Position numbers and translations under genes: made by a program. 64,000 bases of DNA, taken from IMG/VR virus record IMGVR_UViG_3300042386_001233, positions 124,001-188,000 of that record, one strand, 5' to 3'. Under the pieces are notes generated by a model. That model had not been told where the DNA came from, made no database searches, and was given only the letters and a program-made list of their open reading frames with translations. Positions 16,753-48,988 of this stretch are shown one piece after another. Position 1 is the first letter of the stretch; each line of letters opens with the position of its first letter.

Positions 16753-18414
16753 ATGCTCAAATCTACCATCGTTACAGGAATATGGGATTTGGGCAGAGGT
16801 TCGCTAGGCGACGGATGGAGCAGGTCTTTTGATCGCTACAGAAACAACTTCTCTGTTCTGCTAAATAATATTAAAGATATTCCTACTATAGTTTTTATAG
16901 ATAAAGAACACGAAGATATAGTATGGAAATACAGAAGCAGAGACAACACAGCTGTTTATCATCATTCTGCTAAGGATTTTGATAATAATTTTTTCCCTTT
17001 TCGCAATCAAGTGGAAAAAATAAGGACAAATGAAGACTGGTTATCTCAAGCTGGCTGGTTAAGAGATAGCACTCAAGCGAAATTGCCATTATACAACCCC
17101 ATGGTAATGAGCAAGATGTTCCTATTGCACAATGCAAAAGTATTTAATCCATTTAGTAGTGAGTACATGTATTGGCTTGATGGTGGAATATCCAATACTG
17201 TTCACCCAGGATACTTTAGCCACGACAAAGTAATAGAAAAAATACAAGATATCACTAAAAAATTCCTCTTTGTGTGTTTTCCTTATGAAACAGAATCAGA
17301 AATCCATGGATTCGACATAAGAAAAATGAGAGAATACGCTAAATCAGAAGAGGTTAATAGGGTTGCTAGAGGAGGATTTTTTGGTGGACACATTGATTAT
17401 ATATCTGAAGCTAATAATCTGTATTATAGTCTATTGAATGATTCTCTCAATAACGGTCTCATGGGTACTGAAGAAAGCATATTTACCCTAATGACATATT
17501 TGCAACCAGAAATGTATCAACATGAAACAATTAATCATGATGGTTTATTGTCAACATTTTTTGAAAAAGTAAAAAATAATCAAACAGTTATAGAAGAAAT
17601 AGCAAAAAACAATCCTAGAAAAAAGCATTCAAATAACGAAACAGTATTATACATTAATGCTTTTAATTCTCCAGAACAATTACAAATGGTCTTGGATAGT
17701 TTTGAACTACATGATAACTCATTTATTACTCAAACAAAAAAGATTCTAATAAACAATAGCACAAAAGAAGATCTCTTCAGTAAGTATGATGCCATTTGCG
17801 AAAAATACGGATTTTCAGAGCAGATTAAAAAAGGAAATTTAGGAGTTTGTCGAGCTAGACAATTTGCTGCTGAACATTTCGCAGACCTTGGTTCTAAATA
17901 CATGATCTTTTTTGAGGACGATATGTTGTTAGATTATTCTATATCTAATTGTAATTTTGGTTTTAAAAAATCGACACCTAATTTATTAAGTAGTCTTATT
18001 CGTATAATGGACAATGAAGAGTATGATTTTTTGAAATTTAGCTTTAGCGAATTTTATGGACATAACGGAGAACAGTGGAGTTGGCATAATGTTCCTTCAG
18101 AATTACGAGTAAAATATTTTGGAGACGCAAAGAAAAAACCCCCAACGAAGTTCTCCTGCATAAAATCTTATAATGGCATACCTTATGCAGAAGGTGAGAT
18201 TTACTATTCAAATTGGCCCCATATAATAGATCAGGAAGGCAACCAAAAACTATTCTTAGATACTACATGGTCAAATCCTTTTGAACAAACGTGGATGAGT
18301 CACATATATACTCTAACAATTAACAATAAAGTTAAACCAGCGATATTATTAGCTAGTCCAATAACACATAATAGGGTTCATTTTTATGAAGCGAACGAAC
18401 GCAAAGAAAATTAA
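16753..18414 (+). CDS. HtrL/WlaTC-like domain fused to a GT-A glycosyltransferase domain
   Basis: TIVTGIWDLGR, YNPMVMSKMFLL, YWLDGG, GGFFGG, GTEESIF; C-terminal domain with NLGVCRARQ and FFEDD. Confidence 0.65.
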   Translation: MLKSTIVTGIWDLGRGSLGDGWSRSFDRYRNNFSVLLNNIKDIPTIVFIDKEHEDIVWKYRSRDNTAVYHHSAKDFDNNFFPFRNQVEKIRTNEDWLSQAGWLRDSTQAKLPLYNPMVMSKMFLLHNAKVFNPFSSEYMYWLDGGISNTVHPGYFSHDKVIEKIQDITKKFLFVCFPYETESEIHGFDIRKMREYAKSEEVNRVARGGFFGGHIDYISEANNLYYSLLNDSLNNGLMGTEESIFTLMTYLQPEMYQHETINHDGLLSTFFEKVKNNQTVIEEIAKNNPRKKHSNNETVLYINAFNSPEQLQMVLDSFELHDNSFITQTKKILINNSTKEDLFSKYDAICEKYGFSEQIKKGNLGVCRARQFAAEHFADLGSKYMIFFEDDMLLDYSISNCNFGFKKSTPNLLSSLIRIMDNEEYDFLKFSFSEFYGHNGEQWSWHNVPSELRVKYFGDAKKKPPTKFSCIKSYNGIPYAEGEIYYSNWPHIIDQEGNQKLFLDTTWSNPFEQTWMSHIYTLTINNKVKPAILLASPITHNRVHFYEANERKEN

Positions 18415-19702
18415 AGCCAAGACTCAAACAGCCACAAAGAGTAATAAAGTAGAGACTATTTTTATTCAGATAGCTTCGTATCGAGATCCTCAACTCCTCC
18501 CAACCTTGAGAGATTTGTTTAGTAAAGCAAAAAATCCAAATAATATCACTGTTGGAATATGCTGGCAACATTCTCCAGATGATACATGGGATGTCCTAGC
18601 AGAGTTTGAAAACGATCCAAGAATAAAAGCTATAAACATAGACTATAAAGATAGTCAAGGTGTTTGCTGGGCTAGAAATTTAGTTCAATCTCTATATAAT
18701 GGAGAAACATATACTCTACAACTAGATAGTCACCACAGATTCGTTCAAGACTGGGATGAAATCTTAATAGATATGCTAAAAGGTTTACAAAAAGACGGCT
18801 ACAATAAACCGTTAATAACAGCATATATACCCAGCTTCGATCCAGACAATGATCCCGCATCCAGAGTTCAAGAGCCTTGGAAAATGAATTTTGATAGATT
18901 CATTCCTGAAGGAGCAGTTTTCTTTTTACCTGCCTCTTTTGATTCTTGGGACGATAAAACCAAACCTCTTCCAGGCAGATTTTATAGTGCTCATTTTGCT
19001 TTTAGCGTAGGAGCATTTTGTAAGGAGGTTCCTCACGATCCTCAATATTATTTTCATGGTGAAGAAATTAGTATTGCGGCTAGAGCATATACTCATGGGT
19101 ATGATATATTCCATCCTCATAAGGTTGTTTGTTGGCATGAATATACCAGAAAGGGAAGAACCAAGCAGTGGGATGATGATAAAAAATGGGGAGACAGGAA
19201 TAATATCTGTCATCTACGAAACAGAAAATTGTTTGAAATGGATGGAGAAAAAAGAGATATAGATTTTGGCCAATATGGTTTTGGCACAGTAAGATCTTTG
19301 AGAGATTACGAAAAATATAGTGGATTATCATTTGGTAAAAGAGCTATACAAAAAAGAGTACAGGATCATCAAGCACCACCAGATCCAGAAACATCCTATC
19401 TACCCGATGAGGATTTTGATAAAAGACTATTAAGGATATTCAAGCATTGCATAGATATTCAATATGGTCAAGTACCAGAAAATGATTATGATTTTTGGGC
19501 TGTTGCTTTTAAAGATAAAGAAGGTCGAGATATATACAGGCAGGACGCAGATAAAGACGAAATACTACGTATTAAAAATGATCCAGATGGATATTGCAAG
19601 GTGTGGAGAGAGTTTCAAACAGAAGTTACTCCAACAAGCTGGTTGATTTGGCCTCATAGCTTATCAAAAGGATGGGCAGAACCGATTGTAGGGTATCTGT
19701 AA
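18386..19702 (+). CDS. GT60-like polypeptide GlcNAc transferase (Skp1-hydroxyproline GlcNAc-T-like)
   Basis: IFIQIASYRDP, GVCWAR, LQLDSHHRF..DWD, FYSAHFAF, EVPHDP..YFHGEE...ARAYTHGYDIFHP, WHEY. Confidence 0.8.
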   Translation: MKRTNAKKIKAKTQTATKSNKVETIFIQIASYRDPQLLPTLRDLFSKAKNPNNITVGICWQHSPDDTWDVLAEFENDPRIKAINIDYKDSQGVCWARNLVQSLYNGETYTLQLDSHHRFVQDWDEILIDMLKGLQKDGYNKPLITAYIPSFDPDNDPASRVQEPWKMNFDRFIPEGAVFFLPASFDSWDDKTKPLPGRFYSAHFAFSVGAFCKEVPHDPQYYFHGEEISIAARAYTHGYDIFHPHKVVCWHEYTRKGRTKQWDDDKKWGDRNNICHLRNRKLFEMDGEKRDIDFGQYGFGTVRSLRDYEKYSGLSFGKRAIQKRVQDHQAPPDPETSYLPDEDFDKRLLRIFKHCIDIQYGQVPENDYDFWAVAFKDKEGRDIYRQDADKDEILRIKNDPDGYCKVWREFQTEVTPTSWLIWPHSLSKGWAEPIVGYL

Positions 19703-20322
19703 AACGTCTTATGCCAATATTTTCAAATATTAGTGCTATTGGAGATTCTCATGTTGGTGCTTTTTCACCATACTGTAGATTATGTACTCTTGGTCCAGTT
19801 ACCATGTATTCATTGACAACAGATAAGCTTAATGAATATATTGTTTATTTGCTTGAACGAAAAGAAATAGATATTAATGGCTGGTGGATTTTTTGTACTG
19901 GCGAAATAGATATAAGATGCTTATTACACAAACAAATAAATGAGTACGGTAGAAAAGAGGACGAGACTATAGAAACATTGGTAGAGAATTATATATCCAA
20001 TCTATATAAGCTGAATCACACCAAGTTAGCCATATCAACCACAGTACCACCTGCAAAAACAGAAGGTTTTGAAGTTCAACAAAAACATACCATTAATTCT
20101 GACTACCCTTTCAAGGGATCAGATTCAGAAAGAAACAGATGGTCTCAAAAATTAAATCACTATTTAATAAATAAGTGCATAGAAAAAAACATTACTTATA
20201 TAGATATATACTCTCTATTCAAGAACAACGAAGGATTTTTAGATCATCAATATATAGACGCAGATATGATACATGTTTCAAAAAATGATAAAATTGTCAC
20301 ATTACTTAATAATTTATACTAG
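19672..20322 (+). CDS. SGNH/GDSL hydrolase-like protein
   Basis: IGDSH, GEIDIR, terminal DMIH (DxxH). Confidence 0.7.
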   Translation: MGRTDCRVSVKRLMPIFSNISAIGDSHVGAFSPYCRLCTLGPVTMYSLTTDKLNEYIVYLLERKEIDINGWWIFCTGEIDIRCLLHKQINEYGRKEDETIETLVENYISNLYKLNHTKLAISTTVPPAKTEGFEVQQKHTINSDYPFKGSDSERNRWSQKLNHYLINKCIEKNITYIDIYSLFKNNEGFLDHQYIDADMIHVSKNDKIVTLLNNLY

Positions 20323-20330
20323 GAGAAACT

Positions 20331-21071
20331 ATGAATTTGCTTTCCGCCCTGACGACATATAATGTTAATTCGAATAAAATGAGAATAGGTAATGAGCACG
20401 ATGGTGGATATATTATCAATGATCTCATAGTTAAAAATACCAAAAGATTAATTTCTGTAGGAATAGGCGGAGAAGACAATTTTGAATTACAGTGGGCAGA
20501 AAAATTCCCAACAACATTCATAGAAGCATACGACGGAACGTATCCGTGTAACAATTTATGTAATAAATTTCCTGATAGAATTAACAAAAACATTTTTTAC
20601 GTTCATAATGACGTTGGTTTTGGAGAAAAACAAATTCCTCTCAATACAATCGTAGATAGTAAAGAAGGAGTTTTATTAAAAGTTGATATAGAAGGTGGTG
20701 AATATACTGCATTTGATAATTTATATCCAGACAGGAATCTAACAGGACTCATCTTAGAAGTCCACGATTTACATATACCTGAGAATTGTCAAAAAATAGC
20801 AAAAATAATCACTGAAAATTTCAAAAACTTGCTTCTTTTCCATGTTCACGGAAATTCGTGGGGAGGTATGTTTGATTTGAACTTGACACCCAATGTCAAT
20901 GATGGTATACTAATCAAGAGGTTTCCTCATGTGCTAGAACTGACATTCATATCAAAGCATATTGTAGATAATTACTCTCTTGAAAAGCGTAAATTCCCTG
21001 TGGATGGTTTGGATAATACTAACAGACATGATTTTCCTGACATAGATCTTTATTGGATAAATGCTATATGA
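20331..21071 (+). CDS. FkbM-like methyltransferase
   Basis: RIGNEHDGGY, SVGIG, LLKVDIEGGEY, LEVH, HVHGN, LELTF. Confidence 0.75.
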   Translation: MNLLSALTTYNVNSNKMRIGNEHDGGYIINDLIVKNTKRLISVGIGGEDNFELQWAEKFPTTFIEAYDGTYPCNNLCNKFPDRINKNIFYVHNDVGFGEKQIPLNTIVDSKEGVLLKVDIEGGEYTAFDNLYPDRNLTGLILEVHDLHIPENCQKIAKIITENFKNLLLFHVHGNSWGGMFDLNLTPNVNDGILIKRFPHVLELTFISKHIVDNYSLEKRKFPVDGLDNTNRHDFPDIDLYWINAI

Positions 21072-21928
21072 TATACATCTCGCTATGTGCTATGCCAGAT
21101 AGATTAGAGACTAAAGATAGTTCGTCCCAATGTTTATCTTCTTTATTAGAACAAGAAACAACCCATGAATATAAAGTTCTTTTAAATATTCCTTTAAAGT
21201 TAAGGAACTACGAAAATACAACTATACCACAATGGGTATTGGATTTAGAAGCAACATATAGCGGTAAGCTTATGATTCTTAGAGATGATACGGACTATGG
21301 ACCAATATCTAATCTATTGTCTCCCATTAAGCTAATAAGTATGGATCCAAATGACATTATTATTATTTGTGATGATGATCATATGTATGATCCAAAAATG
21401 ATCGAATACCATCTTAAAAAATTGCAACAATATCCCGACCATCATGCTATTTGCTTTAGGGGTAATCAACCACTAGAACTAAGAACGTGGTATATAGATA
21501 ATGTTAAATATGGTAAACTCTATAATTCCTGTGTTTTATTTCCAACAAGAAATGATATTTATTTAAAATTGCCTGATCATTGGCATAGCGTATCATATCG
21601 TAGAAAGTTTATTCAACAAGACATTTTTGATCAAGATTTTTTAAATATATCTTGGAATAACGACATTTTAATGGGATGTTATGCATGGTCTCATGACTTT
21701 TATTTCTTATGCGCTAACTATGATCAAGAGAGTGATTTTAGACCCGTTAACTATGATGGTCGAGGAGCTAATTCTTTTCCTTTAATGAAGATGCTTCCAT
21801 TTTCTGGAGACAGTGGGTGCAATAGATGGAGAGATAAAAATAAGAAACCGGGTGAAGATATATGGGATTTAGAAAAATTTCGACAACTATTTGATAAGGA
21901 TAAAGGAATAATACAATTATGGAAATAA
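21053..21928 (+). CDS. GT-A glycosyltransferase
   Basis: ISL..PDRL, LNIP, DYGPIS.L, IIICDDD, NDI. Confidence 0.7.
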   Translation: MDKCYMIYISLCAMPDRLETKDSSSQCLSSLLEQETTHEYKVLLNIPLKLRNYENTTIPQWVLDLEATYSGKLMILRDDTDYGPISNLLSPIKLISMDPNDIIIICDDDHMYDPKMIEYHLKKLQQYPDHHAICFRGNQPLELRTWYIDNVKYGKLYNSCVLFPTRNDIYLKLPDHWHSVSYRRKFIQQDIFDQDFLNISWNNDILMGCYAWSHDFYFLCANYDQESDFRPVNYDGRGANSFPLMKMLPFSGDSGCNRWRDKNKKPGEDIWDLEKFRQLFDKDKGIIQLWK

Positions 21929-22689
21929 TCATATCTCTAACAACTGTACCTAATAGGTTATATGAGCATCACGGTCATTCAGCCACTAGGGCTGCTCTCA
22001 CCACTCTATTAGAACAGTCATATCCTTCATATTCTGTTCACTTAAATATTCCTTTAGAATATAGAGGAGAGCAAGTTTCTATACCAGATTGGCTTAATGA
22101 CTACACAAATAAGTACAAACATCTAAAAGTTTTTTTAACACAAGACTATGGATCAATAACCAAGCTAATACCAACTCTAGAGAGAGTTGAAGATCCAGAA
22201 AGCATTATCATATTAGCAGATGATGATCTTTACTATATGGACGGATTAATTTCTGCACATATCAATGGAAGACAAAAATATCCAGACTACGCATTAGGTT
22301 TTGCTGGTATGGCAGCAATAGATGGCTCATGTCACTTTTGTACAACAATACCAAAGGATACCAGAGTTAAGGTTTTAGAAGGATACAAAACAGTATCATA
22401 CCTAAGAAAATTTTTTGACATTAATGAACTCAAAAAAGATTTTGTTGGTAAGTCTTGGAGAGATGACGAAACATTATCGGCTTATATGGGGTATAAAAAC
22501 ATTAAAAAATTAGTATTATCATATGAAGGGGATACTGACTTTTCTCCAAGAGTAGAGTCTTTTCCAGTAACTGGTCATGTTCCAGCAGAAAGAGGTGGAT
22601 GTAATTTATTCAGGGACTGTTCTGATTCCCAAAACAAGTCAGAACAAAATATACAGGAATTTTTTAAACTTGGTTACTTAGAAAGATAA
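21919..22689 (+). CDS. GT-A glycosyltransferase (paralog of upstream gene)
   Basis: ISLTTVPNRL, LNIP, DYGSITKL, IILADDD, DDE. Confidence 0.75.
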   Translation: MEIIISLTTVPNRLYEHHGHSATRAALTTLLEQSYPSYSVHLNIPLEYRGEQVSIPDWLNDYTNKYKHLKVFLTQDYGSITKLIPTLERVEDPESIIILADDDLYYMDGLISAHINGRQKYPDYALGFAGMAAIDGSCHFCTTIPKDTRVKVLEGYKTVSYLRKFFDINELKKDFVGKSWRDDETLSAYMGYKNIKKLVLSYEGDTDFSPRVESFPVTGHVPAERGGCNLFRDCSDSQNKSEQNIQEFFKLGYLER

Positions 22690-22691
22690 TT

Positions 22692-23072
22692 ATGAAATAC
22701 TTTTATTGTGTCATTTTGGTCATTCTTTTGTCTAGCAGCACTAAAGCTCAACAATGGTCTAATCCTGAAAATGCTAATCTTACAAGCACTATGACAAATA
22801 TGATGGTTAATTTTGGTATAGCAGGAATGCAGTCATCCCAACCTTATGCAGCAAATAATACTAATCAATATCTAGATTATCAAAATGGATATTATCAAGA
22901 ACTACAAAATAATTTAACTAGAACTGAAATATATTTTCAAAAAAGACAAACTAATATGTACTACAGAGAACTTGAGTTTATTCAAAAACGAGAACTCAAA
23001 AATCTTAAAAAATATGATCAGTTGACCATACCAGAGCTTAATAGAATTTTTGGGAAAGATAGCAGATATTAA
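22692..23072 (+). CDS. hypothetical protein with signal peptide
   Basis: MKYFYCVILVILLSSSTKA-QQ N-terminus. Confidence 0.55.
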   Translation: MKYFYCVILVILLSSSTKAQQWSNPENANLTSTMTNMMVNFGIAGMQSSQPYAANNTNQYLDYQNGYYQELQNNLTRTEIYFQKRQTNMYYRELEFIQKRELKNLKKYDQLTIPELNRIFGKDSRY

Positions 23073-24004
23073 AATATTGGATTTACAATCCCATAACCTT
23101 GATATTTTTTTATTCCTTTATATCTAGGATTTTCTAAAGAAATAGCATGTAGTTTAAATACTTCTATATAGTCTTCAAATGTTTTAAGCTGATATTTTTT
23201 ATGCTTATTATTATAGCTTAATAGTAATGAAGCACAACCGACGACAAATGGATTGCTCATGCTTGTTCCGCTCATACTAGCATATCTATTTCCTGGAACA
23301 CATCCAATAATATTGTGACCAGGAGCCAAAAAGTCTAAATCATCTCCACTACAGGTAAATGAAGTTCTATTCATATTTTCGTCTATTGCTCCTATAGATA
23401 TAGTATTTTTATATCTAGCTGGATACATTATTTCGGCATTTTCTCCGCTATTTCCAGCAGCGCAAAAAACAACACATCCCTTACTATTAGCATAAGTGAT
23501 AGCATCCTCTATAACCTTCGCCGGTGCTGGTGAACCAAGACTCATAGTTATAAAATCTACATCTCCGTGGTTTGCAGCCCAGTAAATTCCGTCTGCAACT
23601 GTGTTCATTGATCCTGAACCATCGTCTCCAAGTGATTTAACCGGAATAATTTTAGTCATAGGAGCAACTCCAACCATGCCAAAACCATTATCTGACGCAG
23701 CTATAGTAGAAGAAACATGCGTTCCGTGACCAGCACCATCTATTGGTTCTTTATTTTGATTAATAAAATTTTTCCCAGGTAATAAATTATCTACTAAGTC
23801 TTTATGGGTTAGGTCACATCCTGTGTCTATAACAGCTACGACTACTCCTTCTCCTTTAGACTCTTTCCATAGATTAGGCACATTAAATTTTGTAAGTTCC
23901 CATCCCTTAAATTGTGGATCATTCACAGATAGTCCATACACATCCTCTCTAACATATGGTAACAGTGAAATATTATTTTTCTTTTTTAAAAAACCTCTAG
24001 CCAT
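23069..24004 (-). CDS. subtilisin-family (S8) serine protease, intracellular ISP-like
   Basis: VAVIDTG, HGTHV, AAGNSG, SGTSMS triad; no signal peptide; N-terminal LLPY. Confidence 0.93.
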   Translation of the reverse strand: MARGFLKKKNNISLLPYVREDVYGLSVNDPQFKGWELTKFNVPNLWKESKGEGVVVAVIDTGCDLTHKDLVDNLLPGKNFINQNKEPIDGAGHGTHVSSTIAASDNGFGMVGVAPMTKIIPVKSLGDDGSGSMNTVADGIYWAANHGDVDFITMSLGSPAPAKVIEDAITYANSKGCVVFCAAGNSGENAEIMYPARYKNTISIGAIDENMNRTSFTCSGDDLDFLAPGHNIIGCVPGNRYASMSGTSMSNPFVVGCASLLLSYNNKHKKYQLKTFEDYIEVFKLHAISLENPRYKGIKKYQGYGIVNPIF

Positions 24005-24006
24005 GA

Positions 24007-24756
24007 TTACTCCTTAGCTTGTTTTAGTGTTTTTTTTATCCAATCGTGGAATAAACTTACCCTAGTATGACAACTTTCGTCTGTATATGTTGAGTTTGGC
24101 TTCCCGTCATAGCCTATAACAGACGAGTGGATTCCGGCAAGTTTGTTGCCTATGAACAAACCCCCGCCACTATCCCCACTACCTATAAGATATTCTAGTT
24201 CTGTCATTTTCTCGTTTCTTCTCGATGGCGAGCAGATTAAAATCTTTCTTTCTGTTCTATCTATAAAATTAGATCCAGCTCTTTTTTTTCCATCTGCTCT
24301 TTCAATACCAGTATTAAATGTTCCAGTAAATCCCAAACCGGCCATAGAGCATACTTTACCTACCTCATCTGAATCAATATATAATTCAGGATAATGGTCT
24401 AATTTAATTTCTTTTTCTATATAACCTAAAGCAATATCATTATAACCAAATACTTCTGTTTTATAATCTTCGTGAATAATAACTTTATCAATCTTGTATT
24501 GTTCTTCACCCACTGTAACTGACCAACTATGGCAATTTTCTACCACATGAGCAGCTGTAATTATCCAATGTGGATCTATTATAACAGCAGATCCACAAGA
24601 CAGTCCTTTGCCGTCAAAACAACATAGTTTAACAACACTATGAAATTTAGACCCATATTCTACATACCTTGAGTCTGGAGTATTAGGATCTATGGTTCCA
24701 GAATAAGCTGCAGAACCTATCAAAAATACTACTAAAGCTAGTAAAAATTGACGCAT
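24007..24756 (-). CDS. trypsin-like (S1) serine protease with signal peptide
   Basis: ITAAHV, NDIAL, GDSGGG; hydrophobic N-terminus. Confidence 0.93.
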   Translation of the reverse strand: MRQFLLALVVFLIGSAAYSGTIDPNTPDSRYVEYGSKFHSVVKLCCFDGKGLSCGSAVIIDPHWIITAAHVVENCHSWSVTVGEEQYKIDKVIIHEDYKTEVFGYNDIALGYIEKEIKLDHYPELYIDSDEVGKVCSMAGLGFTGTFNTGIERADGKKRAGSNFIDRTERKILICSPSRRNEKMTELEYLIGSGDSGGGLFIGNKLAGIHSSVIGYDGKPNSTYTDESCHTRVSLFHDWIKKTLKQAKE

Positions 24757-25069
24757 GGTTTTGCACTTTGGGAGAATAGGGACGATTCTTAACCTTATTT
24801 AAATACACCGAGCAATCATTAATCACGTCAACATTCCAACTACTATAATCCATTAAATGGCCAAAAACAAAATGACAATCAGAACACAAAGTAATAAGAT
24901 TAGTTAAATCCAACTCTCTGCTTGGATTGACATGAAAAGGCTCTATATGATGTACCTGAATTTTTTTGCATGAACCGCAAGCCATGCAGCAGGGTTGTGA
25001 TAGTAGGTGTTTTTTTCTTATTAATGACCATTTAGGAGATCTGTCGGATAAAATATTCCACATTTTCAC
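24683..25069 (-). CDS. HNH endonuclease
   Basis: CMACG...QVHHIEP...NLITLCSDCH..GH. Confidence 0.85.
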   Translation of the reverse strand: MKMWNILSDRSPKWSLIRKKHLLSQPCCMACGSCKKIQVHHIEPFHVNPSRELDLTNLITLCSDCHFVFGHLMDYSSWNVDVINDCSVYLNKVKNRPYSPKVQNHASIFTSFSSIFDRFCSLFWNHRS

Positions 25070-25073
25070 TATA

Positions 25074-25646
25074 TTATCCGCTTATTTCCATATAAATACA
25101 GTAATTCCCAACATTATCAAACCATGTTCCACTATCCCATATTCCACAATATACATATCCAGAGGATGGGGCAACTATATTTCCTCCCAATCCTATATAA
25201 AATGATCCAGTAGTAGTAAACGGTATTGAAGAAGCATCTGTTGTTGATAAAACGCCAAATACTGCATTATAATTGTTTATAAAAACATTAGGAGTACTAT
25301 AAATGCCACGAGCATCACTAATACAAGCACCAACAGCACAAGAAACACACCCTCTAACAGAGAAACTTATAGTCTGACCCGCTGTCACAAACTGCTGACC
25401 AATTCTTTTAAGTGTTGCTCCATCGGAATAAACTAATGATGTTTCAATGGGTAGGCACGTAATACTTTCGGCACTTATACACATTCTGGTTGGCGTGGGT
25501 GTGATTGTTGGTGTGGGTGTAGGGGTATTAGTTTTTGTTATTGTGGGTGTTAGACTTACTGTTGGAGTTATTGTTGGTGCTGGTGTGCTGCTACTCAGGG
25601 GTTTTTGAGTAGCTACTGGACAGCAATTTATATTAATAATTGTCAT
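25074..25646 (-). CDS. Cys-anchor + Thr/Pro stalk + putative lectin-like domain protein
   Basis: N-terminus [22 protein letters not shown] repeats, C-terminal F.IG...APSSG.VY.GIWD...DN.G.Y (PA-IL/LecA-like by eye). Confidence 0.6.
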   Translation of the reverse strand: MTIININCCPVATQKPLSSSTPAPTITPTVSLTPTITKTNTPTPTPTITPTPTRMCISAESITCLPIETSLVYSDGATLKRIGQQFVTAGQTISFSVRGCVSCAVGACISDARGIYSTPNVFINNYNAVFGVLSTTDASSIPFTTTGSFYIGLGGNIVAPSSGYVYCGIWDSGTWFDNVGNYCIYMEISG

Positions 25647-26233
25647 ATTTTATAACCACTTACTCTTGAGATCATAGGTCCAAAACATCCACCCGGAGAT
25701 ATTGATTCAAATTTTAGTAATGTACTATTAGAATTAGCAGTAAAAGTCTCAGAAATAGTATTCCAGCCAAAAGTTTCTGCTGAAACTTGAAACCCATAAC
25801 TTGGACACGTATAAGTATATGTTTTATTAAGTATTATATTAGTACCAGTTAGCGTTAATTTCATAACTTTATCAGCAACATTATTATCAAAACGCACCCC
25901 ACAATTTCCGCTTAGATCAAAATAAATTACATAATTTTGTCCAGGTATTGTTGTAATAGTTTGACTGATATATCCAATCCCACAAGCGTTTAAGTCTACA
26001 AAATATCTATCAAAACCATAATAATTATAATCTACAGAACTAAAAGTCCAATTACTAAGGGAATTTTCTAATGATCCGTTTATCACTATGTTAACAGGTT
26101 CTGCGCTTGGCGTAGGCGTTATTGTTTGTGTAGGAGTAGGGGTATTGGTTTTTGTTATCGTGGGAGTAGGAGTAACACTACTTAATGGTTTTTGAGTAGA
26201 CACTGGACAGCAATTAATACTTATGATGCTCAT
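25643..26233 (-). CDS. Cys-anchor + Thr/Pro stalk + DUF642/choice-of-anchor-C-like carbohydrate-binding domain
   Basis: N-terminus [22 protein letters not shown] repeats, NIVINGSLE...VDLNA...[13 protein letters not shown]...FDLSGN...FTA...L.F.S...FGP. Confidence 0.7.
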
Positions 26234-28302
26234 GGGATATAGTTAATTTCTCTTTGGGCTATAAAATAGTAGGTGGGTTCTGGTGTAGGTTGAGGCGTAG
26301 AACTTGGTGGTGGTGTAGAGCTTGGGGTTGCTGCCGGTGTGCTGCTAGATGTTGGTTCTGGAGTTTGAGTCGGAGTAATACTTGGAGTTGTTGTTATTGT
26401 CGGCGTTACGGTAGCAGTTGGTGTTGGGGTTGGAGTTACGCAGCATGATTCAAAGCAATACGTTCCAGGAAATGATACCCAAGAACTTGGAATATTAGAT
26501 GGCGAAACAGATGTAGAATCAAAATATGCATCTTGACAATTTGTAAAATGCATAGCCCTAATTCTAAAAGTTAGAGGCTGATCCGCACTTGTGCAAGTAC
26601 CGTCTCCACTTTTATTCTCAAAACTATTTAGATAATACTGATAAGATGAAGCGTTAGGATTAAATATGCAGATATTATCTACTATATCATCAACCGATCC
26701 GCTTTGACCATTTGCGTCCAGTGCTTGTATCTGATACCCCTCTATACAGCCTTGACTACCTGGTTCAGTATTTCTGTTCCATGTTAAATATATAATTACT
26801 TGGTTAGGGCTTTCAGTACCATCCTTTATACATGAACAGGCAGCACTTTGAATACTAGGAGTTAATAACTGACAATTATTTGTTGGCGTTGGGGTCGGAC
26901 TTTGGCTAGGCGGTGGAGTACAACAATTACAATTACTTGTATTTCCCTCAAATGCCCATACTGGAGGAACATTACATTGACAGGCAGTAGATATTCCAGT
27001 TATATTTAATCCTCCAACACAAGAAATATTAGCACTTGCTGTCCATTTATTAGCACATGAACTAGAACCAGTATATGCTACACTAGGATCACAAGTAACT
27101 GACATAAAGTATGTATCGCCACAAGCCAATGTGCCGCTACTAGTCCAATAATTTGGCATGACTTTAGTAAATAACAAATCTAGACTTATAGTTCTGGTTA
27201 TATTGTTACAATTTAATACAAATGTAGTCAAACCATTCCAGTCGCAGCAAGTAGCTCTACTTGGAGATGGCGTTAATGTCTGAGATGCTGTTAATGAAGG
27301 CGTTGGAGTTAGCGTTCTGGTGACTGTTTGGGTTGGTGTTCTTGTTGGAGTAGGAGTGCAACAACTGCAATTATCAAAATTGCCAACAAAACTCCAAATA
27401 GGAGGAGCGTTACATTGACAGGCTTCTTTTATTCCAGTAATTATTAGACCAGTAACACAGGATATGGTTAATGAAGAAGTCCATTTATTTATACATGAAC
27501 CTGATCCTGTGTATCTAGCATTTGGATCACATGTTATCGTAGAACTAAAAGTATCTCCACATGATAAACTTCCACTAGCTTGCCATGTATTTGCTGCTGT
27601 TTTTGTATAGGCTACTGGAATGACTAAATTGCCACAAGAAGCATCAAACTGTAAGAATGTATTACCGTCCCACTCACAACATGTAACAGTAGATGGGCTT
27701 GGAGTATTTGTCGGAGTAGCAGTAATTGTGATAGAAGGAGTAATAGAGGGTGTTACTGTAGCAGTAGCAGATCTTGTGATAGTAACTGTTGGGGTTTGGC
27801 TTACTGTAATACTTGGTGTTTGCGTTGGTGTTTGCGTAGGTGTTGGTGTCTGTGTATTGGTCTGAGTAATACTAGGAGTTAGTGTAGGGGTCGATGTAGC
27901 TGTTCGACTATTAGTGGGGGTTGCAGTTGGTGTTCTTGTATTAGTAGGGGTGTTTGTTCTAGTTGTTGTTATGCTTGGAGTTACGGTAGGGGTTACTGTT
28001 CTTGTTAGTGTTCTAGTTGGTGTTCTTGTTGGGGTAACTGTTCTAGTTACAGTAATGCTTGGAGTTATTGTAGGGGTAAGTGTTGGTGTCGGTGTTGGCG
28101 TTTTTTTAGGGGTTCTAGTTGGTGTTGGAGTTTTAGTAGGTGTCTTAGTAGGCGTTTTACTAAGGGAATTTCTATCTATAAAAGGACACCCATCATCCGA
28201 CCCTATCCTTGGAGGTTTTGGAGTTTCTGTTGGTGTTCTGGTTGGTGTTGGAGATGGCGGAAGTATTTTCCGCTCATTTTGTCCGTTCATTCTGTTTGTC
28301 AT
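26230..28302 (-). CDS. large mucin-like Thr/Pro/Ser-rich protein with two Cys-rich repeat domains
   Basis: 690 aa; long TPT tracts separate two ~110 aa homologous Cys-rich domains and a third beta-rich Cys domain. Confidence 0.8.
26920..27684 (-). repeat. internal duplication: two Cys-rich domains (27358-27684 and 26920-27252)
   Basis: TCC.W.G.T...W..SG.L.CGDT...TCDP...YTGS.SC.NKWT.S..ISCV.GL.ITGI..ACQCN.PP.W.F.GN..NC.CC occurs in both. Confidence 0.9.
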
Positions 28303-28305
28303 TTA

Positions 28306-29307
28306 TTACAATACTTTCGCAGCTATTAAACATCCTTTTGACACTGAATGTAACGGATCGGCGGCATGCTTAACTTCTTTAATAGACAAAGGAAAATTAT
28401 TTTCTGATAGTTTTTTCTTAAAATGTTCAATATAACCACCAGCTTGTGATGTTCCACCAGCAATGACTATTGTTAGTGGGTCTTTAAACTTTGGTAAAGC
28501 TTTATGATCTGTTAGTGCTGCTGTTAATTGTTTAGTAGTATAATCTATTAAACGATCATAATATGACGATACAGCTGCTAATATAGGATTATCATTATGC
28601 TGACCAACATTAAAATTTCCACCCTCTTTCTCAGCCTGTACGACACTATCCGGTTCCCCTGTGGCTACGGCGCTCATTCTATCTACCCAATCCCCAGATT
28701 TAGTTGTGGAAAATACAACAGTGGGTTCACCATTTAGCATTACACAAACATTAGTCATACCAGCACCACAGCTAATAGCTATACCAGTATAATCATTATC
28801 CGCTAACTCAGCATAGCATAAAGCTTCAGCTTCATTAATTGATCTAGCGTTATATCCACAGCTATCTAAAATAGTTTTGACTACATCTTCATGATATCCA
28901 ACATCAAAATCTTCATCTTCTTGGTCTACTGGTTGAGCAGGAACACAAAAAACGATCTTTTCAAGGGGCTCCGAAGATTGCCCGACTACTTCCTTTAATA
29001 TAAAAGCTAAGACTCTTTTCGCATCTTTCTCTTTTGCAGAAACAACTCCTTTGTACATTGGTCTTTTAGCGGTGTCGTTTCTCTCAATAGCTTTTTCAAT
29101 AGCATCTTGTCCGAGGATAATAAAAGAACCGTCTGTATCTTTAATAAAGACTTTTCCAGCCAATCCCTTTTCTATCATCTTTGTTGCTACTGGAGTAGAT
29201 GGCTTGATGATATAAAAGGCATCTCTAAAGTCTTTGTATTGTACTTTATCTCCTTTGTCCTCAGATAAAACAATATAGCTTGTTCCTACGTCAAGACCCC
29301 TAGCCAT
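28306..29307 (-). CDS. actin-like ATPase (volactin/MreB-FtsA superfamily)
   Basis: Phosphate-1 GLDVGTS, connect INEAEA, phosphate-2 ISCGAGMTNV, GDWVD, adenosine IVIAGGTS, terminal P..SVSKG. Confidence 0.88.
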   Translation of the reverse strand: MARGLDVGTSYIVLSEDKGDKVQYKDFRDAFYIIKPSTPVATKMIEKGLAGKVFIKDTDGSFIILGQDAIEKAIERNDTAKRPMYKGVVSAKEKDAKRVLAFILKEVVGQSSEPLEKIVFCVPAQPVDQEDEDFDVGYHEDVVKTILDSCGYNARSINEAEALCYAELADNDYTGIAISCGAGMTNVCVMLNGEPTVVFSTTKSGDWVDRMSAVATGEPDSVVQAEKEGGNFNVGQHNDNPILAAVSSYYDRLIDYTTKQLTAALTDHKALPKFKDPLTIVIAGGTSQAGGYIEHFKKKLSENNFPLSIKEVKHAADPLHSVSKGCLIAAKVL

Positions 29308-29727: not shown

Positions 29728-30618
29728 CTATATCGTACCCATGACTCTGCCCTTTTGGGTACGAACAACATAACCCTTACGAACCAAAAACGGCTCAATA
29801 CTATTCTCGATAGTATCTAAAGCTATTCCAGTCATTGCTGATATAGACTTAAGACCCAAAGGATTACCCTTGCTTCGTCTCAAAGCATCAATATAAAGCC
29901 TATCATACAGATCCAAACCCTTACTATCTATACCCTGAGTAGAAAAAATGGTATCAATTGTACATGGATCGGTATGGCATATCTTGTAGTTTTTATACCA
30001 TAATAGTCTAGCATTAAGAATTCTCGGAGTACCCTTGCTTCTTTTTGCTATCTCAACCAAATCTTCATCAGAGATTTCTAGATCTAATTTAGCAGAGTTC
30101 AATCTTGCTACTTTAGCTAGATCATCATCCGTATAGAAAGAAAGATGTTCTTTGATTGTAAACCTGTCATAAAATGGCTGACTTAAACTTCCCCCACTAG
30201 TAGTCGCTCCGATAAGAGTAAACATTGGAAGATCAATAGTTTCTGGAGCATCTTCTGATGATATACTAAGTACAAAATCTTCCATGATAGGATACAAAAA
30301 CTCCTCTACTGTTTTGGGCAACCTGTGTATTTCGTCAATAAACAACACAGACCTAGCAGAGATTCCCATAATATATGGCAAAAGATTTTTTATGCTACGA
30401 ATATTAGCAGCATTGAGAGTATAAAGACTGACCCCCATTTCGTTTGCTATAGCACTCGCTATGGTAGTCTTGCCAAGCCCAGGAGGGCCGTCTATTAAAA
30501 CATGAGGCAGCACACTGCTAGACATTTTACAGCCCATAGCAGAGATGCGTAGACGCTCAATAACGTCGCCCTGACCAATGATTTCATCAAAACTCTTCGG
30601 CCTTGTAACATTTGCCAT
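29728..30618 (-). CDS. ruvB: Holliday junction branch-migration AAA+ helicase RuvB
   Basis: RPKSFDEIIGQ, GPPGLGKTT, FIDEIHRL, LYPIMEDF, FTLIGATT, DRF, GTPR, IEPFL...RTQKGR. Confidence 0.95.
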   Translation of the reverse strand: MANVTRPKSFDEIIGQGDVIERLRISAMGCKMSSSVLPHVLIDGPPGLGKTTIASAIANEMGVSLYTLNAANIRSIKNLLPYIMGISARSVLFIDEIHRLPKTVEEFLYPIMEDFVLSISSEDAPETIDLPMFTLIGATTSGGSLSQPFYDRFTIKEHLSFYTDDDLAKVARLNSAKLDLEISDEDLVEIAKRSKGTPRILNARLLWYKNYKICHTDPCTIDTIFSTQGIDSKGLDLYDRLYIDALRRSKGNPLGLKSISAMTGIALDTIENSIEPFLVRKGYVVRTQKGRVMGTI

Positions 30619-48891: not shown

Positions 48892-48912
48892 CAGAATCCT
48901 TCCTGTTTAAAG

Positions 48913-48988
48913 TAGGGCGAGTTGGAGTCGAACCAACCTATGAACACCTTATAAGAGTGTCGGATGCAACCGGCTTACCTTCCGCCCC
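48913..48988 (-). tRNA. trnI: tRNA-Ile(UAU)
   Basis: GGGGCGG/UCGCCCU acceptor, anticodon arm ACACU-CUUAUAA-GGUGU, T-arm GUUGG-UUCGACU-CCAAC, A73. Confidence 0.85.

What the first reader, a model, noticed from the sequence alone, without database searches (positions are those of the whole stretch)
25074..26233. Modular cassettes: shared Cys-Cys anchor + stalk with interchangeable sugar-binding heads
Seen: two adjacent genes share M(T/S)II(N/S)INCCPV(A/S)TQKPLSS...[12 protein letters not shown], recognisably similar at DNA level, then diverge into unrelated domains (DUF642-like versus PA-IL-like). Inference: a virion-docking peptide displaying swappable lectin heads, giving adhesion or host-range variation by recombination in the TP-coding repeats.
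Basis: partly seen in the sequence, partly recalled or inferred. Interest (0 to 1): 0.6.

Follow-up and report, generated by a model that had tools for sequence, protein, structure and literature searches.

The report
Swappable lectin heads on a shared phage peptide
A 244 kb lake-water phage and its relatives carry small genes that share a 19-residue Cys-Cys start peptide and a Thr/Pro stalk but end in at least seven exchangeable binding domains, which fits a plug-in adhesin system whose attachment partner is still unknown.

Summary
Genes A (25074-25646, minus) and B (25643-26233, minus) share 16 of their first 19 residues and a Thr/Pro stalk, then diverge completely.

- **Heads.** B's head is DUF642, above Pfam's cut-off. 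A's head is a PA-IL/LecA-like lectin fold: the AF2 model has pLDDT 87, and the ten best PDB matches are all LecA, PllA or EclA.
- **Catalogue.** The peptide occurs only in one clade of lake jumbo phages, always in the same genomic slot. It precedes at least seven different heads and one headless 47-residue stub:
  - two PA-IL-like types, one of them only borderline
  - DUF642
  - FGE-sulfatase
  - Laminin_G_3
  - two unassigned heads
- **Shuffling.** The same head domains also occur without the peptide, fused inside larger proteins.
- **Recombination.** DNA homology between related phages breaks at the gene start, at the peptide/stalk junction and inside the stalk.
- **Selection.** Synonymous codon variation with invariant residues shows that selection acts on the peptide itself.

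Modularity, lectin-type heads and recombination at the stalk are therefore supported. Virion docking is not tested. The one complex prediction gave no answer, and the locus lies about 85 kb from the putative tail module. The nearest known analogue is the short conserved N-terminal peptide of branched receptor-binding proteins in K1-5, SP6 and KP32 phages. I rate this a new variant of a known kind.

The parts
25590..25646 (-). Gene A, codons 1-19: the shared N-terminal peptide ([19 protein letters not shown])
   Evidence: M1, I3, I4, N5, I6, N7, C8, C9, P10, T13, P16, L17, S18 and S19 are invariant among six orthologues. Codon variation is synonymous.
25485..25589 (-). Gene A, codons 20-54: Thr/Pro stalk, variable in length between orthologues
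   Evidence: One search shows 10-residue indels. A recombination joint with L034 falls at about 25509. A short 12-nt tandem repeat lies at 25548-25577.
25077..25484 (-). Gene A, codons 55-190: PA-IL/LecA-like lectin head with 7 invariant Cys
   Evidence: AF2 model pLDDT 87.1, pTM 0.85. The Foldseek PDB top ten are all PllA, LecA or EclA (E 5e-5 to 8e-4, TM 0.54-0.76). hhalign to the PF07828 member P0020 gives 92% probability. The Atlas lead agrees.
26177..26233 (-). Gene B, codons 1-19: the shared N-terminal peptide ([19 protein letters not shown])
   Evidence: Homology with L011 ends at 26169, just after this peptide.
26096..26176 (-). Gene B, codons 20-46: Thr/Pro stalk
25646..26095 (-). Gene B, codons 47-196: DUF642 head
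   Evidence: PF04862, E 3.8e-8, 33.7 bits against a cut-off of 27, residues 76-191. Also phrog_18458.
26230..28302 (-). 690-aa Thr/Pro- and Cys-rich mosaic protein (35 Cys), translationally coupled to B. It has two repeated Cys-rich domains bounded by CC motifs, a third domain, a Thr/Pro tail and a short C-terminal peptide.
   Evidence: The internal repeat is 49% identical. It has no Pfam hit. It is conserved upstream of the variable slot in relatives. It is a candidate partner only; the complex job gave no answer.
24683..25069 (-). HNH endonuclease gene at the 3' border of the variable slot
   Evidence: PF01844, E 2e-7. It is found at that border in the relatives compared by BLAST. It forms a 92-100% identity island between diverged flanks.
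24007..24756 (-). Trypsin-like serine protease with a signal-peptide-like N-terminus. The gene body is itself a swapped module.
   Evidence: PF00089, E 4e-18. Its identity to relatives is 47%, 57%, 92% or 100% while its neighbours stay at 80-100%.
23069..24004 (-). Subtilase (S8) gene, the conserved right flank of the locus
   Evidence: PF00082, E 2e-50..
28306..29307 (-). Actin-like (Volactin family) gene, the conserved left flank of the locus
   Evidence: PF25216, E 6e-66..
16753..22689 (+). Divergent glycosyltransferase cluster kept next to the locus in relatives: HtrL/YibB, PF11397 GlcNAc transferase, FkbM-like methyltransferase and GT2. It is a possible modifier of the Thr/Pro stalks, which is inference only.

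Best explanation
Genes A and B belong to a family of small modular display proteins in a clade of lake jumbo phages.

**Architecture (shown).** Each protein has three parts:
- An almost invariant 19-residue N-terminal peptide, M-[TS]-I-I-[NS]-I-N-C-C-P-[VI]-x-T-[QKR]-[KQ]-P-[LF]-x-[SN].
- A Thr/Pro-rich stalk of variable length.
- An exchangeable ligand-binding head.

Here the heads are a DUF642 domain (B) and a PA-IL/LecA-like lectin (A).

**Other points shown.**
- Heads are exchanged between phages at one fixed slot.
- The joints lie at the gene start, at the peptide/stalk junction and inside the stalk.
- The peptide is kept by selection on the protein sequence.

**Mechanism (inferred).** The peptide is a common attachment handle. 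It looks like a short beta-strand with one hydrophobic face, followed by two adjacent cysteines. I propose that it ties any head to the same partner and may be locked by disulfides once the particle is outside the cell. The stalk holds the head away from that partner. The partner could be a virion fibre component. The co-translated 690-aa Thr/Pro- and Cys-rich protein is the first candidate. Relatives of several heads sit in tail-fibre or baseplate-type proteins.

**Consequence (inferred).** Swapping heads would change which surface glycan or ligand the phage, or its released proteins, binds. The conserved HNH endonuclease gene at the slot's border may stimulate the exchanges.
For: **Shared peptide**
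-.

**Catalogue of heads behind the same peptide**
- A-type, PA-IL-like (P0001-P0006).
- DUF642 (P0007, P0010).
- C (P0008, no assignment).
- D (P0009). Its homologue in the L007 498-aa protein scores 21.2 bits on PF07828 against a cut-off of 22.5.
- E, FGE-sulfatase (P0013).
- F (P0014).
- G, Laminin_G_3.
- A headless 47-aa stub.

**Same slot.** All lie between the actin-like gene plus large Thr/Pro protein and the HNH, trypsin and subtilase genes.

**Restricted distribution.** Pattern scans of IMG/VR, JGI metagenomes and 185,579 species genomes found the peptide only in this phage clade. All other hits were in non-coding frames.

**Recombination joints.**

**Selection on the peptide.** Synonymous changes occur at I3, I4, I6, N7, C8, P10, T13 and P16 while the residues stay invariant.

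**The Cys pair needs an outside partner.** Head D has a single Cys and the stub has none, so the head cannot supply a partner for the peptide's CC.

**Link to virion proteins**
- An A-like domain occurs in P0017, whose N-terminus matches long-tail-fibre PHROGs (E 9e-14).
- Head G matches baseplate and virion-structural PHROGs.
- In L009 a tail-fibre-like 580-aa gene directly precedes two peptide-bearing genes.
- FGE-sulfatase domains and Thr/Pro linkers also occur in the putative tail module of the complete genome.

**Precedent.** Docking by short N-terminal peptides of 7 to about 30 residues is documented in PMC6872550.
Against: - There is no evidence that A, B or the 690-aa protein are in the virion.
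- The locus is about 85 kb from the putative tail module and lies among early or accessory-type genes.
- No T4 gp9/gp10-type docking domain was detected in the complete genome. That search also failed on all controls, so it is uninformative.
- The complex prediction of the 690-aa protein with B scored 0.02, which counts as no answer.
- TATAAATA-type late-promoter motifs are not enriched in the window.
- Phage particles assemble in a reducing cytoplasm, so a disulfide lock could form only after release.
- Heads C and F have no fold assignment.
- Sugar binding is untested for every head.
Confidence: 0.5

Rival explanations
1. Oligomerisation hub (collectin- or immunoglobulin-hinge-like). The N-terminal Cys-Cys peptide does not dock to the virion. 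Instead it cross-links two or more of these chains, of the same or different heads, into multivalent bouquets. These are released at lysis or loosely associated with the particle. Multivalency would give the weak lectin heads their avidity.
For: The two adjacent Cys are invariant and cannot be paired within the head, because D has one Cys and the stub has none. The same peptide on different heads in one genome, as with A and B here or C and E in L009, would allow mixed oligomers. The architecture of N-terminal Cys segment, extended stalk and lectin head parallels collectins and ficolins; this comparison rests on my own knowledge and was not tested. The proteins are small, they have no Pfam match to known virion-attachment domains, and they are encoded far from the tail module.
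Against: The hypothesis does not explain the conservation of the non-Cys residues (I3, I4, I6, N7, P10, T13, P16) any better than docking does. No oligomer prediction could be run. A headless stub kept in three contigs is hard to use as a lectin oligomer.
Confidence: 0.25
2. Modification or processing tag. The peptide recruits an enzyme encoded next door. One candidate is the PF11397-type polypeptide GlcNAc transferase and its partner transferases, which would O-glycosylate the Thr/Pro stalk. The other is the trypsin-like or subtilisin-like protease, which would remove the peptide. On this view it works like a leader peptide and not as a structural anchor.
For: A glycosyltransferase cluster and two protease genes flank the slot in the relatives whose flanks were recovered. 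The complete genome also encodes a GlmS-type enzyme for hexosamine supply. Thr/Pro-rich stretches are classical O-glycosylation substrates, and enzymes that add alpha-GlcNAc to Thr start mucin glycosylation in Trypanosoma cruzi (PMC3769586, abstract). That those enzymes belong to the same family (GT60) as PF11397 is my own knowledge. Virion glycosylation by phage enzymes is known in mycobacteriophages, as cited in PMC12619734.
Against: The 690-aa protein has much longer Thr/Pro tracts but lacks the peptide, so the peptide is not needed to mark a stalk. The Lys-Pro bond in the peptide is a poor trypsin site; this is my own knowledge. Phage glycosyltransferases more often modify DNA or host polysaccharide (PMC12619734). 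There is no direct evidence.
Confidence: 0.12
3. DNA-level feature only. The conserved 5' segment is kept because it serves as the homology patch or translation-initiation region for cassette exchange, and the peptide itself has no function.
For: Homology between phages starts or ends exactly at this segment. Several copies are preceded by a conserved junction with the upstream gene.
Against: Third-codon positions vary freely at nearly every codon while the residues stay invariant. Summed over pairs, 359 codon differences are synonymous and 209 are non-synonymous, and the latter are confined to a few positions. The upstream contexts differ between copies.
Confidence: 0.05
4. Export or capsid-targeting signal. 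The peptide is either a signal for secretion or lipidation by the host, or a T4-type capsid-targeting sequence that loads the proteins into the head for injection.
For: In T4-type phages, a hypervariable set of otherwise unrelated proteins shares a roughly 10-residue N-terminal capsid-targeting leader; this is my own knowledge. Neighbouring genes (the trypsin-like protease and the 126-aa ORF) do have signal-peptide-like N-termini.
Against: By inspection the peptide has no hydrophobic core of signal-peptide length, no lipobox, no twin-arginine motif and no Glu-type prohead-protease site. It was not found in any of 185,579 species genomes. Cys-rich lectin folds on long stalks are unlikely cargo for injection through a tail. 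No Gp23-type capsid gene was detected, but the controls failed too.
Confidence: 0.05

Closest known systems
Branched receptor-binding-protein systems with a short conserved N-terminal docking peptide (coliphages K1-5/K1E, Salmonella phage SP6, Klebsiella phages KP32, KP34, Menlow and PhiK64-1; PMC6872550)
   Same: Otherwise unrelated adjacent genes share only a short N-terminal peptide, as short as seven residues in those phages, which attaches exchangeable binding modules to a common partner. Truncated proteins that keep the peptide also occur there, like the 47-aa stub here. Gene order is syntenic around a divergent slot.
   Different: - Those heads are large trimeric beta-helix depolymerases or tailspikes in the tail gene module. 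They dock to a T4 gp10-like domain.
- Here the heads are small lectin-type beta-sandwiches on Thr/Pro stalks.
- The peptide here has a Cys-Cys pair and no sequence relation to theirs.
- No gp10-like domain was found, although that search was uninformative.
- The locus here lies outside the putative tail module.
- Docking is not demonstrated here.
PA-IL/LecA, PllA and EclA lectins (PF07828; PDB 2vxj, 1l7l, 5odu, 6ygq)
   Same: Head A has the same small beta-sandwich fold (TM 0.54-0.76). It is linked by profile comparison to a PF07828 member over the C-terminal loop pattern G-x-[LV]-Y-x-G-x-x-D-x-G-T-x-x-D-N-x-G.
   Different: - Sequence identity is only 11-19%.
- There is no direct Pfam hit.
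- Head A has seven conserved Cys.
- It is a domain on a stalk, not a free tetrameric cytoplasmic lectin.
- Its relatives are extremely rare, with 7 hits among 1.84 billion representatives.
- Galactose and Ca2+ binding are untested.
DUF642 (PF04862), a galactose-binding-domain-like family known from plant cell-wall proteins and bacteria
   Same: Head B scores above the curated cut-off. DUF642 and A-like domains also occur fused in one chain in P0015 and P0019.
   Different: Only profile positions 57-154 of 157 are matched. The phage context and the peptide-plus-stalk attachment are not part of the family description. The ligand is unknown.
Collectins and ficolins (N-terminal Cys-rich segment, collagen stalk, lectin head); comparison from my own knowledge
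   Same: The order of parts is the same, as is the logic: a short N-terminal Cys segment for inter-chain links, an extended stalk and a terminal sugar-binding head.
   Different: The stalk here is Thr/Pro-rich, not Gly-X-Y collagen. The heads have other folds. This is analogy only, with no homology.
Capsid-targeting sequence of T4 internal proteins and the hypervariable ip locus; comparison from my own knowledge
   Same: One hyperplastic locus holds unrelated proteins that share only a short N-terminal leader.
   Different: The T4 leader ends in a Glu cleavage site and loads small basic proteins into the head. The peptide here has no Glu and precedes extracellular-type Cys-rich lectin domains.
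Receptor-binding proteins of dairy streptococcal and lactococcal phages, with repeat-flanked variable heads; comparison from my own knowledge
   Same: Low-complexity repeat-coding DNA next to the head acts as a recombination site for head exchange.
   Different: Those repeats encode collagen-like Gly-X-Y, and the conserved N-terminal part is a folded domain of a tail-tip protein.

Membership tests
PA-IL / LecA-like lectins (PF07828), head A | Match to the Pfam model above its gathering score | tested here: not met
   There is no Pfam family at E <= 0.1 for A, nor at E <= 1 for orthologue P0005. PF07828 was not found in the complete genome by the genome search.
PA-IL / LecA-like lectins (PF07828), head A | LecA-type beta-sandwich fold | tested here: met
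   AF2 model pLDDT 87.1, pTM 0.85. The Foldseek PDB top ten are exclusively PllA, PA-IL/LecA or EclA-N (E 5e-5 to 8e-4, probability 1.00). The next hit is at E 1.5e-2.
PA-IL / LecA-like lectins (PF07828), head A | Sequence homology to a recognised member | tested here: met
   The head-A profile finds P0020 (E 3.4e-4 in 1.84 billion proteins). P0020 is a PF07828 member at 34.5 bits against a cut-off of 22.5. hhalign gives 92% probability, E 7e-7, over 56 columns.
PA-IL / LecA-like lectins (PF07828), head A | Ca2+- and galactose-binding loop residues and actual sugar binding | tested here: inconclusive
   D117, D123, N124, G126 and N127 are invariant in all 11 aligned sequences. T120 is invariant only among the close head-A orthologues. 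They align with the D-x-G-T-x-x-D-N-x-G loop of P0020. Correspondence to LecA's metal ligands rests on memory only. Binding is not testable here.
DUF642 (PF04862), head B | Match to the Pfam model above its gathering score | tested here: met
   E 3.8e-8, 33.7 bits against a cut-off of 27, residues 76-191 on profile positions 57-154 of 157. Orthologue P0007 carries the same precomputed domain.
Conserved-peptide (branched) receptor-binding-protein systems | Short conserved N-terminal peptide on otherwise unrelated, neighbouring proteins | tested here: met
Conserved-peptide (branched) receptor-binding-protein systems | Adaptor or first RBP with a T4 gp10-like docking domain | tested here: inconclusive
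   PF07880 was not found in the complete genomes G001 and G002, but the search rang in no control genome either.
Conserved-peptide (branched) receptor-binding-protein systems | Genes lie in the tail or structural module and products are virion components | tested here: not met
   The locus is at 149-152 kb of G001. The putative tail and fibre module is at 13-68 kb. Immediate neighbours are actin-like, RuvB-like, rIIB/rIIA, HNH and protease genes. Virion presence is not testable here.
Conserved-peptide (branched) receptor-binding-protein systems | Heads are trimeric beta-helix depolymerases or tailspikes | tested here: not met
   The assigned heads are small beta-sandwich or lectin-type domains. 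Heads C and F have no fold assignment.
Sec, Tat or lipoprotein signal peptides | Positively charged n-region, hydrophobic core of 7 or more residues, and a cleavage site or lipobox | tested here: not met
   Tested by inspection of the sequence only. Seven residues precede the Cys pair, with no charge and no lipobox. No dedicated predictor was available.
Diversity-generating retroelement targets (FGE-sulfatase / C-type-lectin heads) | Reverse transcriptase in the genome | tested here: not met
   PF00078 is absent from G001 and G002, while the controls rang.

The most novel reading that the evidence does not exclude
The locus encodes a phage-made mucin-like or collectin-like glycoprotein display system. 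A Cys-Cys N-terminal knot joins chains to each other or to the 690-aa fibre protein. The Thr/Pro stalks are O-GlcNAc-glycosylated in the infected cell by the adjacent PF11397-type polypeptide GlcNAc transferase, supplied by the phage's own GlmS. This makes them stiff and resistant to the phage's own two proteases. The tips carry exchangeable lectins, including the first PA-IL-type lectin assigned to a phage. Together these would tune adhesion to host or particle glycans in lakes.
Probability: 0.12. Interest if true: 0.8.

Novelty: new variant of a known kind. Interest (0 to 1): 0.55.

Why it matters
If the peptide is a universal handle, this phage clade shows a minimal plug-in design for adhesins: about 20 residues plus a flexible stalk suffice to mount any small binding domain. 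The design is carried by uncultured jumbo phages that recur in lake metagenomes.

The finding offers four things:
- A natural catalogue of compatible heads.
- Defined recombination joints.
- A rare PA-IL-type lectin lineage, with only seven relatives among 1.84 billion representative proteins.
- A testable link between Thr/Pro stalks and phage-encoded protein glycosylation.

The general principle, conserved N-terminal peptide with swappable receptor-binding modules, is already established in Klebsiella, coli and Salmonella phages. The advance is therefore one of variety and context, not of kind.

Tried and rejected
- **Cultured-phage searches.** megablast and tblastn of the locus and of A and B against 50,697 phage records found no match. 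The nearest cultured relatives of rIIA are under 40% identical.
- **First AF2 model of full-length A.** With six close orthologues it reached only pLDDT 43 and was unusable. It was replaced by a head-only model with distant homologues.
- **Sequence searches of PDB.** Heads A and D and the A4 profile gave only chance hits.
- **Head A against head D by hhalign.** No relation was detected.
- **Head C.** No Pfam hit and no Atlas lead.
- **Relaxed DNA patterns for the peptide.** The extra hits in viral, metagenome and genome collections are all in non-coding or unrelated frames.
- **Complex prediction, 690-aa protein (residues 230-690) with B.** Score 0.02, no answer. It counts neither for nor against binding.
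- **T4 late-promoter motif TATAAATA.** Nine sites against 12.7 expected, so it says nothing about timing.
- **Canonical T4-like identity.** The PF07068 (Gp23) and PF07880 (gp9/10) searches were empty in both genomes and in all controls, so they are uninformative.
- **DGR-driven head variation.** Rejected, because there is no reverse transcriptase.
- **Foldseek of head A against viral models (BFVD).** Nothing at E <= 0.001.
- **RNA evidence.** No RNA run holds the locus.
- **Not used or not encountered.** Read laying was not used. No alternative genetic code was used.
Full report
**1. The observation**

On the minus strand, gene B (25643-26233, 196 aa) and gene A (25074-25646, 190 aa) follow a 690-aa gene (26230-28302). 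Each junction is a four-base ATGA overlap. Stop codons lie one to three codons upstream of both ATGs, so the shared sequence is the real N-terminus.

BLASTP aligns residues 1-19 with 16 of 19 identities (E 2e-8) and finds nothing else significant. The first 200 nt or so also align at the DNA level, at 77% identity with a 29-nt gap inside the Thr/Pro-coding part.

**2. The genome**

The window is part of a 90.5 kb contig. That contig is 100% identical to positions 112,580-203,069 of a complete record, G001: 243,821 bp, with direct terminal repeats and CheckV completeness 100%.

- It is a jumbo phage with rIIA, rIIB and an ATP-dependent ligase.
- Pfam models for T4 Gp23 and gp9/10 found nothing, but they also failed on every control. 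I therefore do not call it T4-like.
- Cultured relatives are remote.
- The exact 4.4 kb locus is held by at least 24 lake-water or freshwater runs from 2020 to 2024.

The locus order on the minus strand is:
1. actin-like (Volactin) gene
2. 690-aa Thr/Pro- and Cys-rich protein
3. B
4. A
5. HNH endonuclease
6. trypsin-like protease
7. subtilase

A glycosyltransferase cluster lies on the other strand.

**3. The heads**

B is DUF642, at 33.7 bits against a cut-off of 27.

A has no Pfam or PDB sequence match.

- A profile of four head-A orthologues was searched against 1.84 billion representative proteins. It found only seven proteins.
- One of them, P0020, is a bona fide PF07828 (PA-IL) member. 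hhalign gives 92% probability over the C-terminal loop.
- With these distant relatives in the alignment, AlphaFold2 gave a confident model: pLDDT 87.1 and pTM 0.85.
- The ten best PDB matches of that model are all PllA, PA-IL/LecA or EclA lectins (E 5e-5 to 8e-4, TM 0.54-0.76). The next hit is at E 0.015.
- The ESM Atlas lead agrees.

Head A is therefore a divergent PA-IL-type lectin fold. Sugar binding itself is untested.

**4.

A back-translated pattern for the peptide was scanned in IMG/VR, in JGI metagenome contigs and in one genome for each of 185,579 prokaryote species. Two word searches of 5.8 billion proteins were added.

Real occurrences, meaning at the N-terminus and followed by a Thr/Pro stalk, come only from relatives of this phage. 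All other hits are chance matches in non-coding frames.

| Head | Example | Assignment |
|---|---|---|
| A | P0001-P0006 | PA-IL-like fold |
| B | P0007, P0010 | DUF642 |
| C | P0008 | unassigned |
| D | P0009 | borderline PA-IL: the homologous domain in L007 scores 21.2 bits on PF07828 against a cut-off of 22.5 |
| E | L009 356 aa, P0013 | FGE-sulfatase |
| F | P0014 | repeat-rich, unassigned |
| G | L036 476 aa | Laminin_G_3 |
| stub | L003, L007, L027 | none: 47 aa, peptide plus stalk ending in a Gly run |

**5. One slot, many fillings**

In every contig with enough flank, these genes lie between the large Thr/Pro protein and the HNH, trypsin and subtilase genes. The filling differs:

- B plus A in the window type
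- D alone in L011 and L012
- an 819-aa fusion plus A in L005
- a 498-aa fusion plus the stub in L003, L007 and L027
- a tail-fibre-like 580-aa gene plus C plus E in L009
- a 646-aa fusion plus F plus G in L036

The fusions contain the same head domains without the peptide:

- L007 498 aa holds a PA-IL-like domain followed by DUF642.
- L005 819 aa and L036 646 aa hold FGE-sulfatase plus other domains.
- Outside the clade, P0015 and P0019 hold DUF642 followed by an A-like domain in one chain.

The modules are therefore shuffled both as separate genes and as domains.

**6. Where the exchanges happen**

| Comparison | Pattern of homology |
|---|---|
| Window vs L011 | Runs through the 690-aa gene to 26169, which is codon 21-22 of B, just past the peptide. 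It resumes at 25050 at the HNH gene. |
| Window vs L005 | Resumes exactly at 25647, the first base before A's start codon. |
| Window vs L034 | 95-100% through B and through A's peptide and stalk. It drops to 60-83% from about 25509 (codon 46, inside the stalk) to the end of A. It returns to 92-100% in HNH, falls to 45-75% in the trypsin body, and recovers in the subtilase. |

Stalk length also varies by whole blocks of codons among A orthologues. I add that the edges of the peptide are also joints.

No reverse transcriptase is present, so this is not DGR-type variation. The HNH gene sits at the slot's border in the relatives compared by BLAST and forms a high-identity island. That fits, but does not prove, endonuclease-stimulated exchange.

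**7. Is the peptide functional as a peptide?**

Across twelve distinct copies, codons for I3, I4, I6, N7, C8, P10, T13 and P16 vary at synonymous sites while the residues never change. Non-synonymous changes are confined to positions 2, 5, 11, 12, 14, 15 and 17-19. This argues against a purely DNA-level role.

The two cysteines cannot be paired inside the head, because head D has one Cys and the stub has none. If they form disulfides, the partner must be another chain. CC motifs also bound the Cys-rich domains of the 690-aa protein, next to its Thr/Pro linkers.

**8. What the peptide does**

This part is inference. The best-fitting model is an attachment handle, as in the conserved N-terminal peptides that dock secondary receptor-binding proteins in K1-5, SP6, KP32 and related phages. 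Truncated proteins that keep the peptide are known there too (PMC6872550).

Support for a virion role is indirect:

- An A-like domain sits in P0017, whose N-terminus matches long-tail-fibre PHROGs.
- Head G matches baseplate and virion-structural PHROGs.
- A tail-fibre-like gene precedes the peptide genes in L009.
- FGE-sulfatase domains and Thr/Pro linkers occur in the putative tail module of G001 at 13-68 kb.

Against it:

- The locus is about 85 kb from that module and lies among non-structural genes.
- No docking domain was identified.
- The one complex prediction gave no answer.

Rival readings are a self- or hetero-oligomerisation hub (collectin-like), a tag for the neighbouring glycosyltransferases or proteases, and an export or capsid-targeting signal. 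The last is weakest, because the peptide lacks the features of such signals and is absent from host-type genomes.

**9. Comparison and novelty**

The principle is known: a conserved short N-terminal peptide, an exchangeable binding module and a repeat-coded recombination site. New here are:

- the peptide itself, with its adjacent cysteines
- the mucin-like Thr/Pro stalk
- the small lectin-type heads, including a rare PA-IL-type lineage with no significant match among predicted viral structures
- the genomic setting next to two proteases and a PF11397 GlcNAc transferase, in a phage that also encodes GlmS

I rate it a new variant of a known kind, with interest 0.55.

Noticed in passing
window 24007-24756 (-): The trypsin-like protease gene, which has a signal-peptide-like N-terminus, is itself a swapped module. 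Its identity to relatives is 47%, 57%, 92% or 100% while the flanking HNH and subtilase genes stay at 80-100%. Sharp joints fall at about 24676 and about 24028.
   Followed up: partly
window 24683-25069 (-): An HNH endonuclease gene lies at the 3' border of the variable slot in the relatives compared by BLAST. It overlaps the start of the trypsin gene by about 74 nt. Against L034 it forms a 92-100% identity island between diverged flanks. It may drive the cassette exchange.
   Followed up: partly
window 16753-22689 (+); G001:223427-225247 (-): The cluster holds HtrL/YibB-like, PF11397 (GlcNAc transferase, 45-49% identical to genes of Xanthomonas and Stenotrophomonas jumbo phages), FkbM-like and GT2 genes. 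It is kept beside the locus in relatives. The complete genome also encodes a GlmS-type glutamine-fructose-6-phosphate aminotransferase. Protein O-glycosylation of the Thr/Pro stalks is possible but untested.
   Followed up: partly
L003:4962-5105 (-), L007:10171-10314 (+), L027:3597-3740 (+): A headless 47-residue ORF consists of the peptide, a Thr/Pro stalk and a run of seven Gly, directly before the HNH gene. In these phages the PA-IL-like and DUF642 domains are instead fused in the preceding 498-aa protein.
   Followed up: partly
window 26230-28302 (-): The 690-aa protein has about 200 residues of Thr/Pro/Arg-rich linker and 35 Cys. It holds two copies of a Cys-rich domain of about 110 residues (49% identical) that start and end with CC motifs, and a short C-terminal peptide after a final Thr/Pro linker. 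That C-terminal peptide also ends a different upstream protein in L035, so it travels with the downstream peptide gene. No family was assigned.
   Followed up: partly
window 28306-29307 (-) and 29728-30618 (-): A phage-encoded actin-like protein matches the Volactin family over its full length (E 6e-66). It lies next to a RuvB-like AAA+ ATPase. Both are conserved in relatives.
   Followed up: no
G001:13704-33068 (+) and 33089-67684: The complete genome has a 6454-aa ORF followed by ORFs of 1169, 830, 771, 1248, 516, 676, 2137 and 2660 aa. Within this block, the 1169-, 1248- and 516-aa ORFs carry FGE-sulfatase domains. The 1248-aa ORF also has DUF285 repeats. The 830-aa ORF has Fn3 and minor-tail matches. 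A further FGE-sulfatase plus Fn3 protein of 674 aa lies at 240770-242794. The block is probably the tail and fibre module.
   Followed up: partly
window 48912-48988 (-): A single tRNA-Ile gene with anticodon TAT.
   Followed up: no
window 24000-28400: The exact B-plus-A arrangement is held, with all sampled words, by at least 24 lake-water or freshwater sequencing runs dated 2020-2024. This variant is therefore stable and widespread. No RNA run holds it.
   Followed up: no
window 22692-23072 (+): A 126-aa ORF with a signal-peptide-like N-terminus lies convergent with the subtilase gene. It is conserved in relatives at 56-100% identity. Its only family hint is a sub-threshold DUF6705 match.
   Followed up: no
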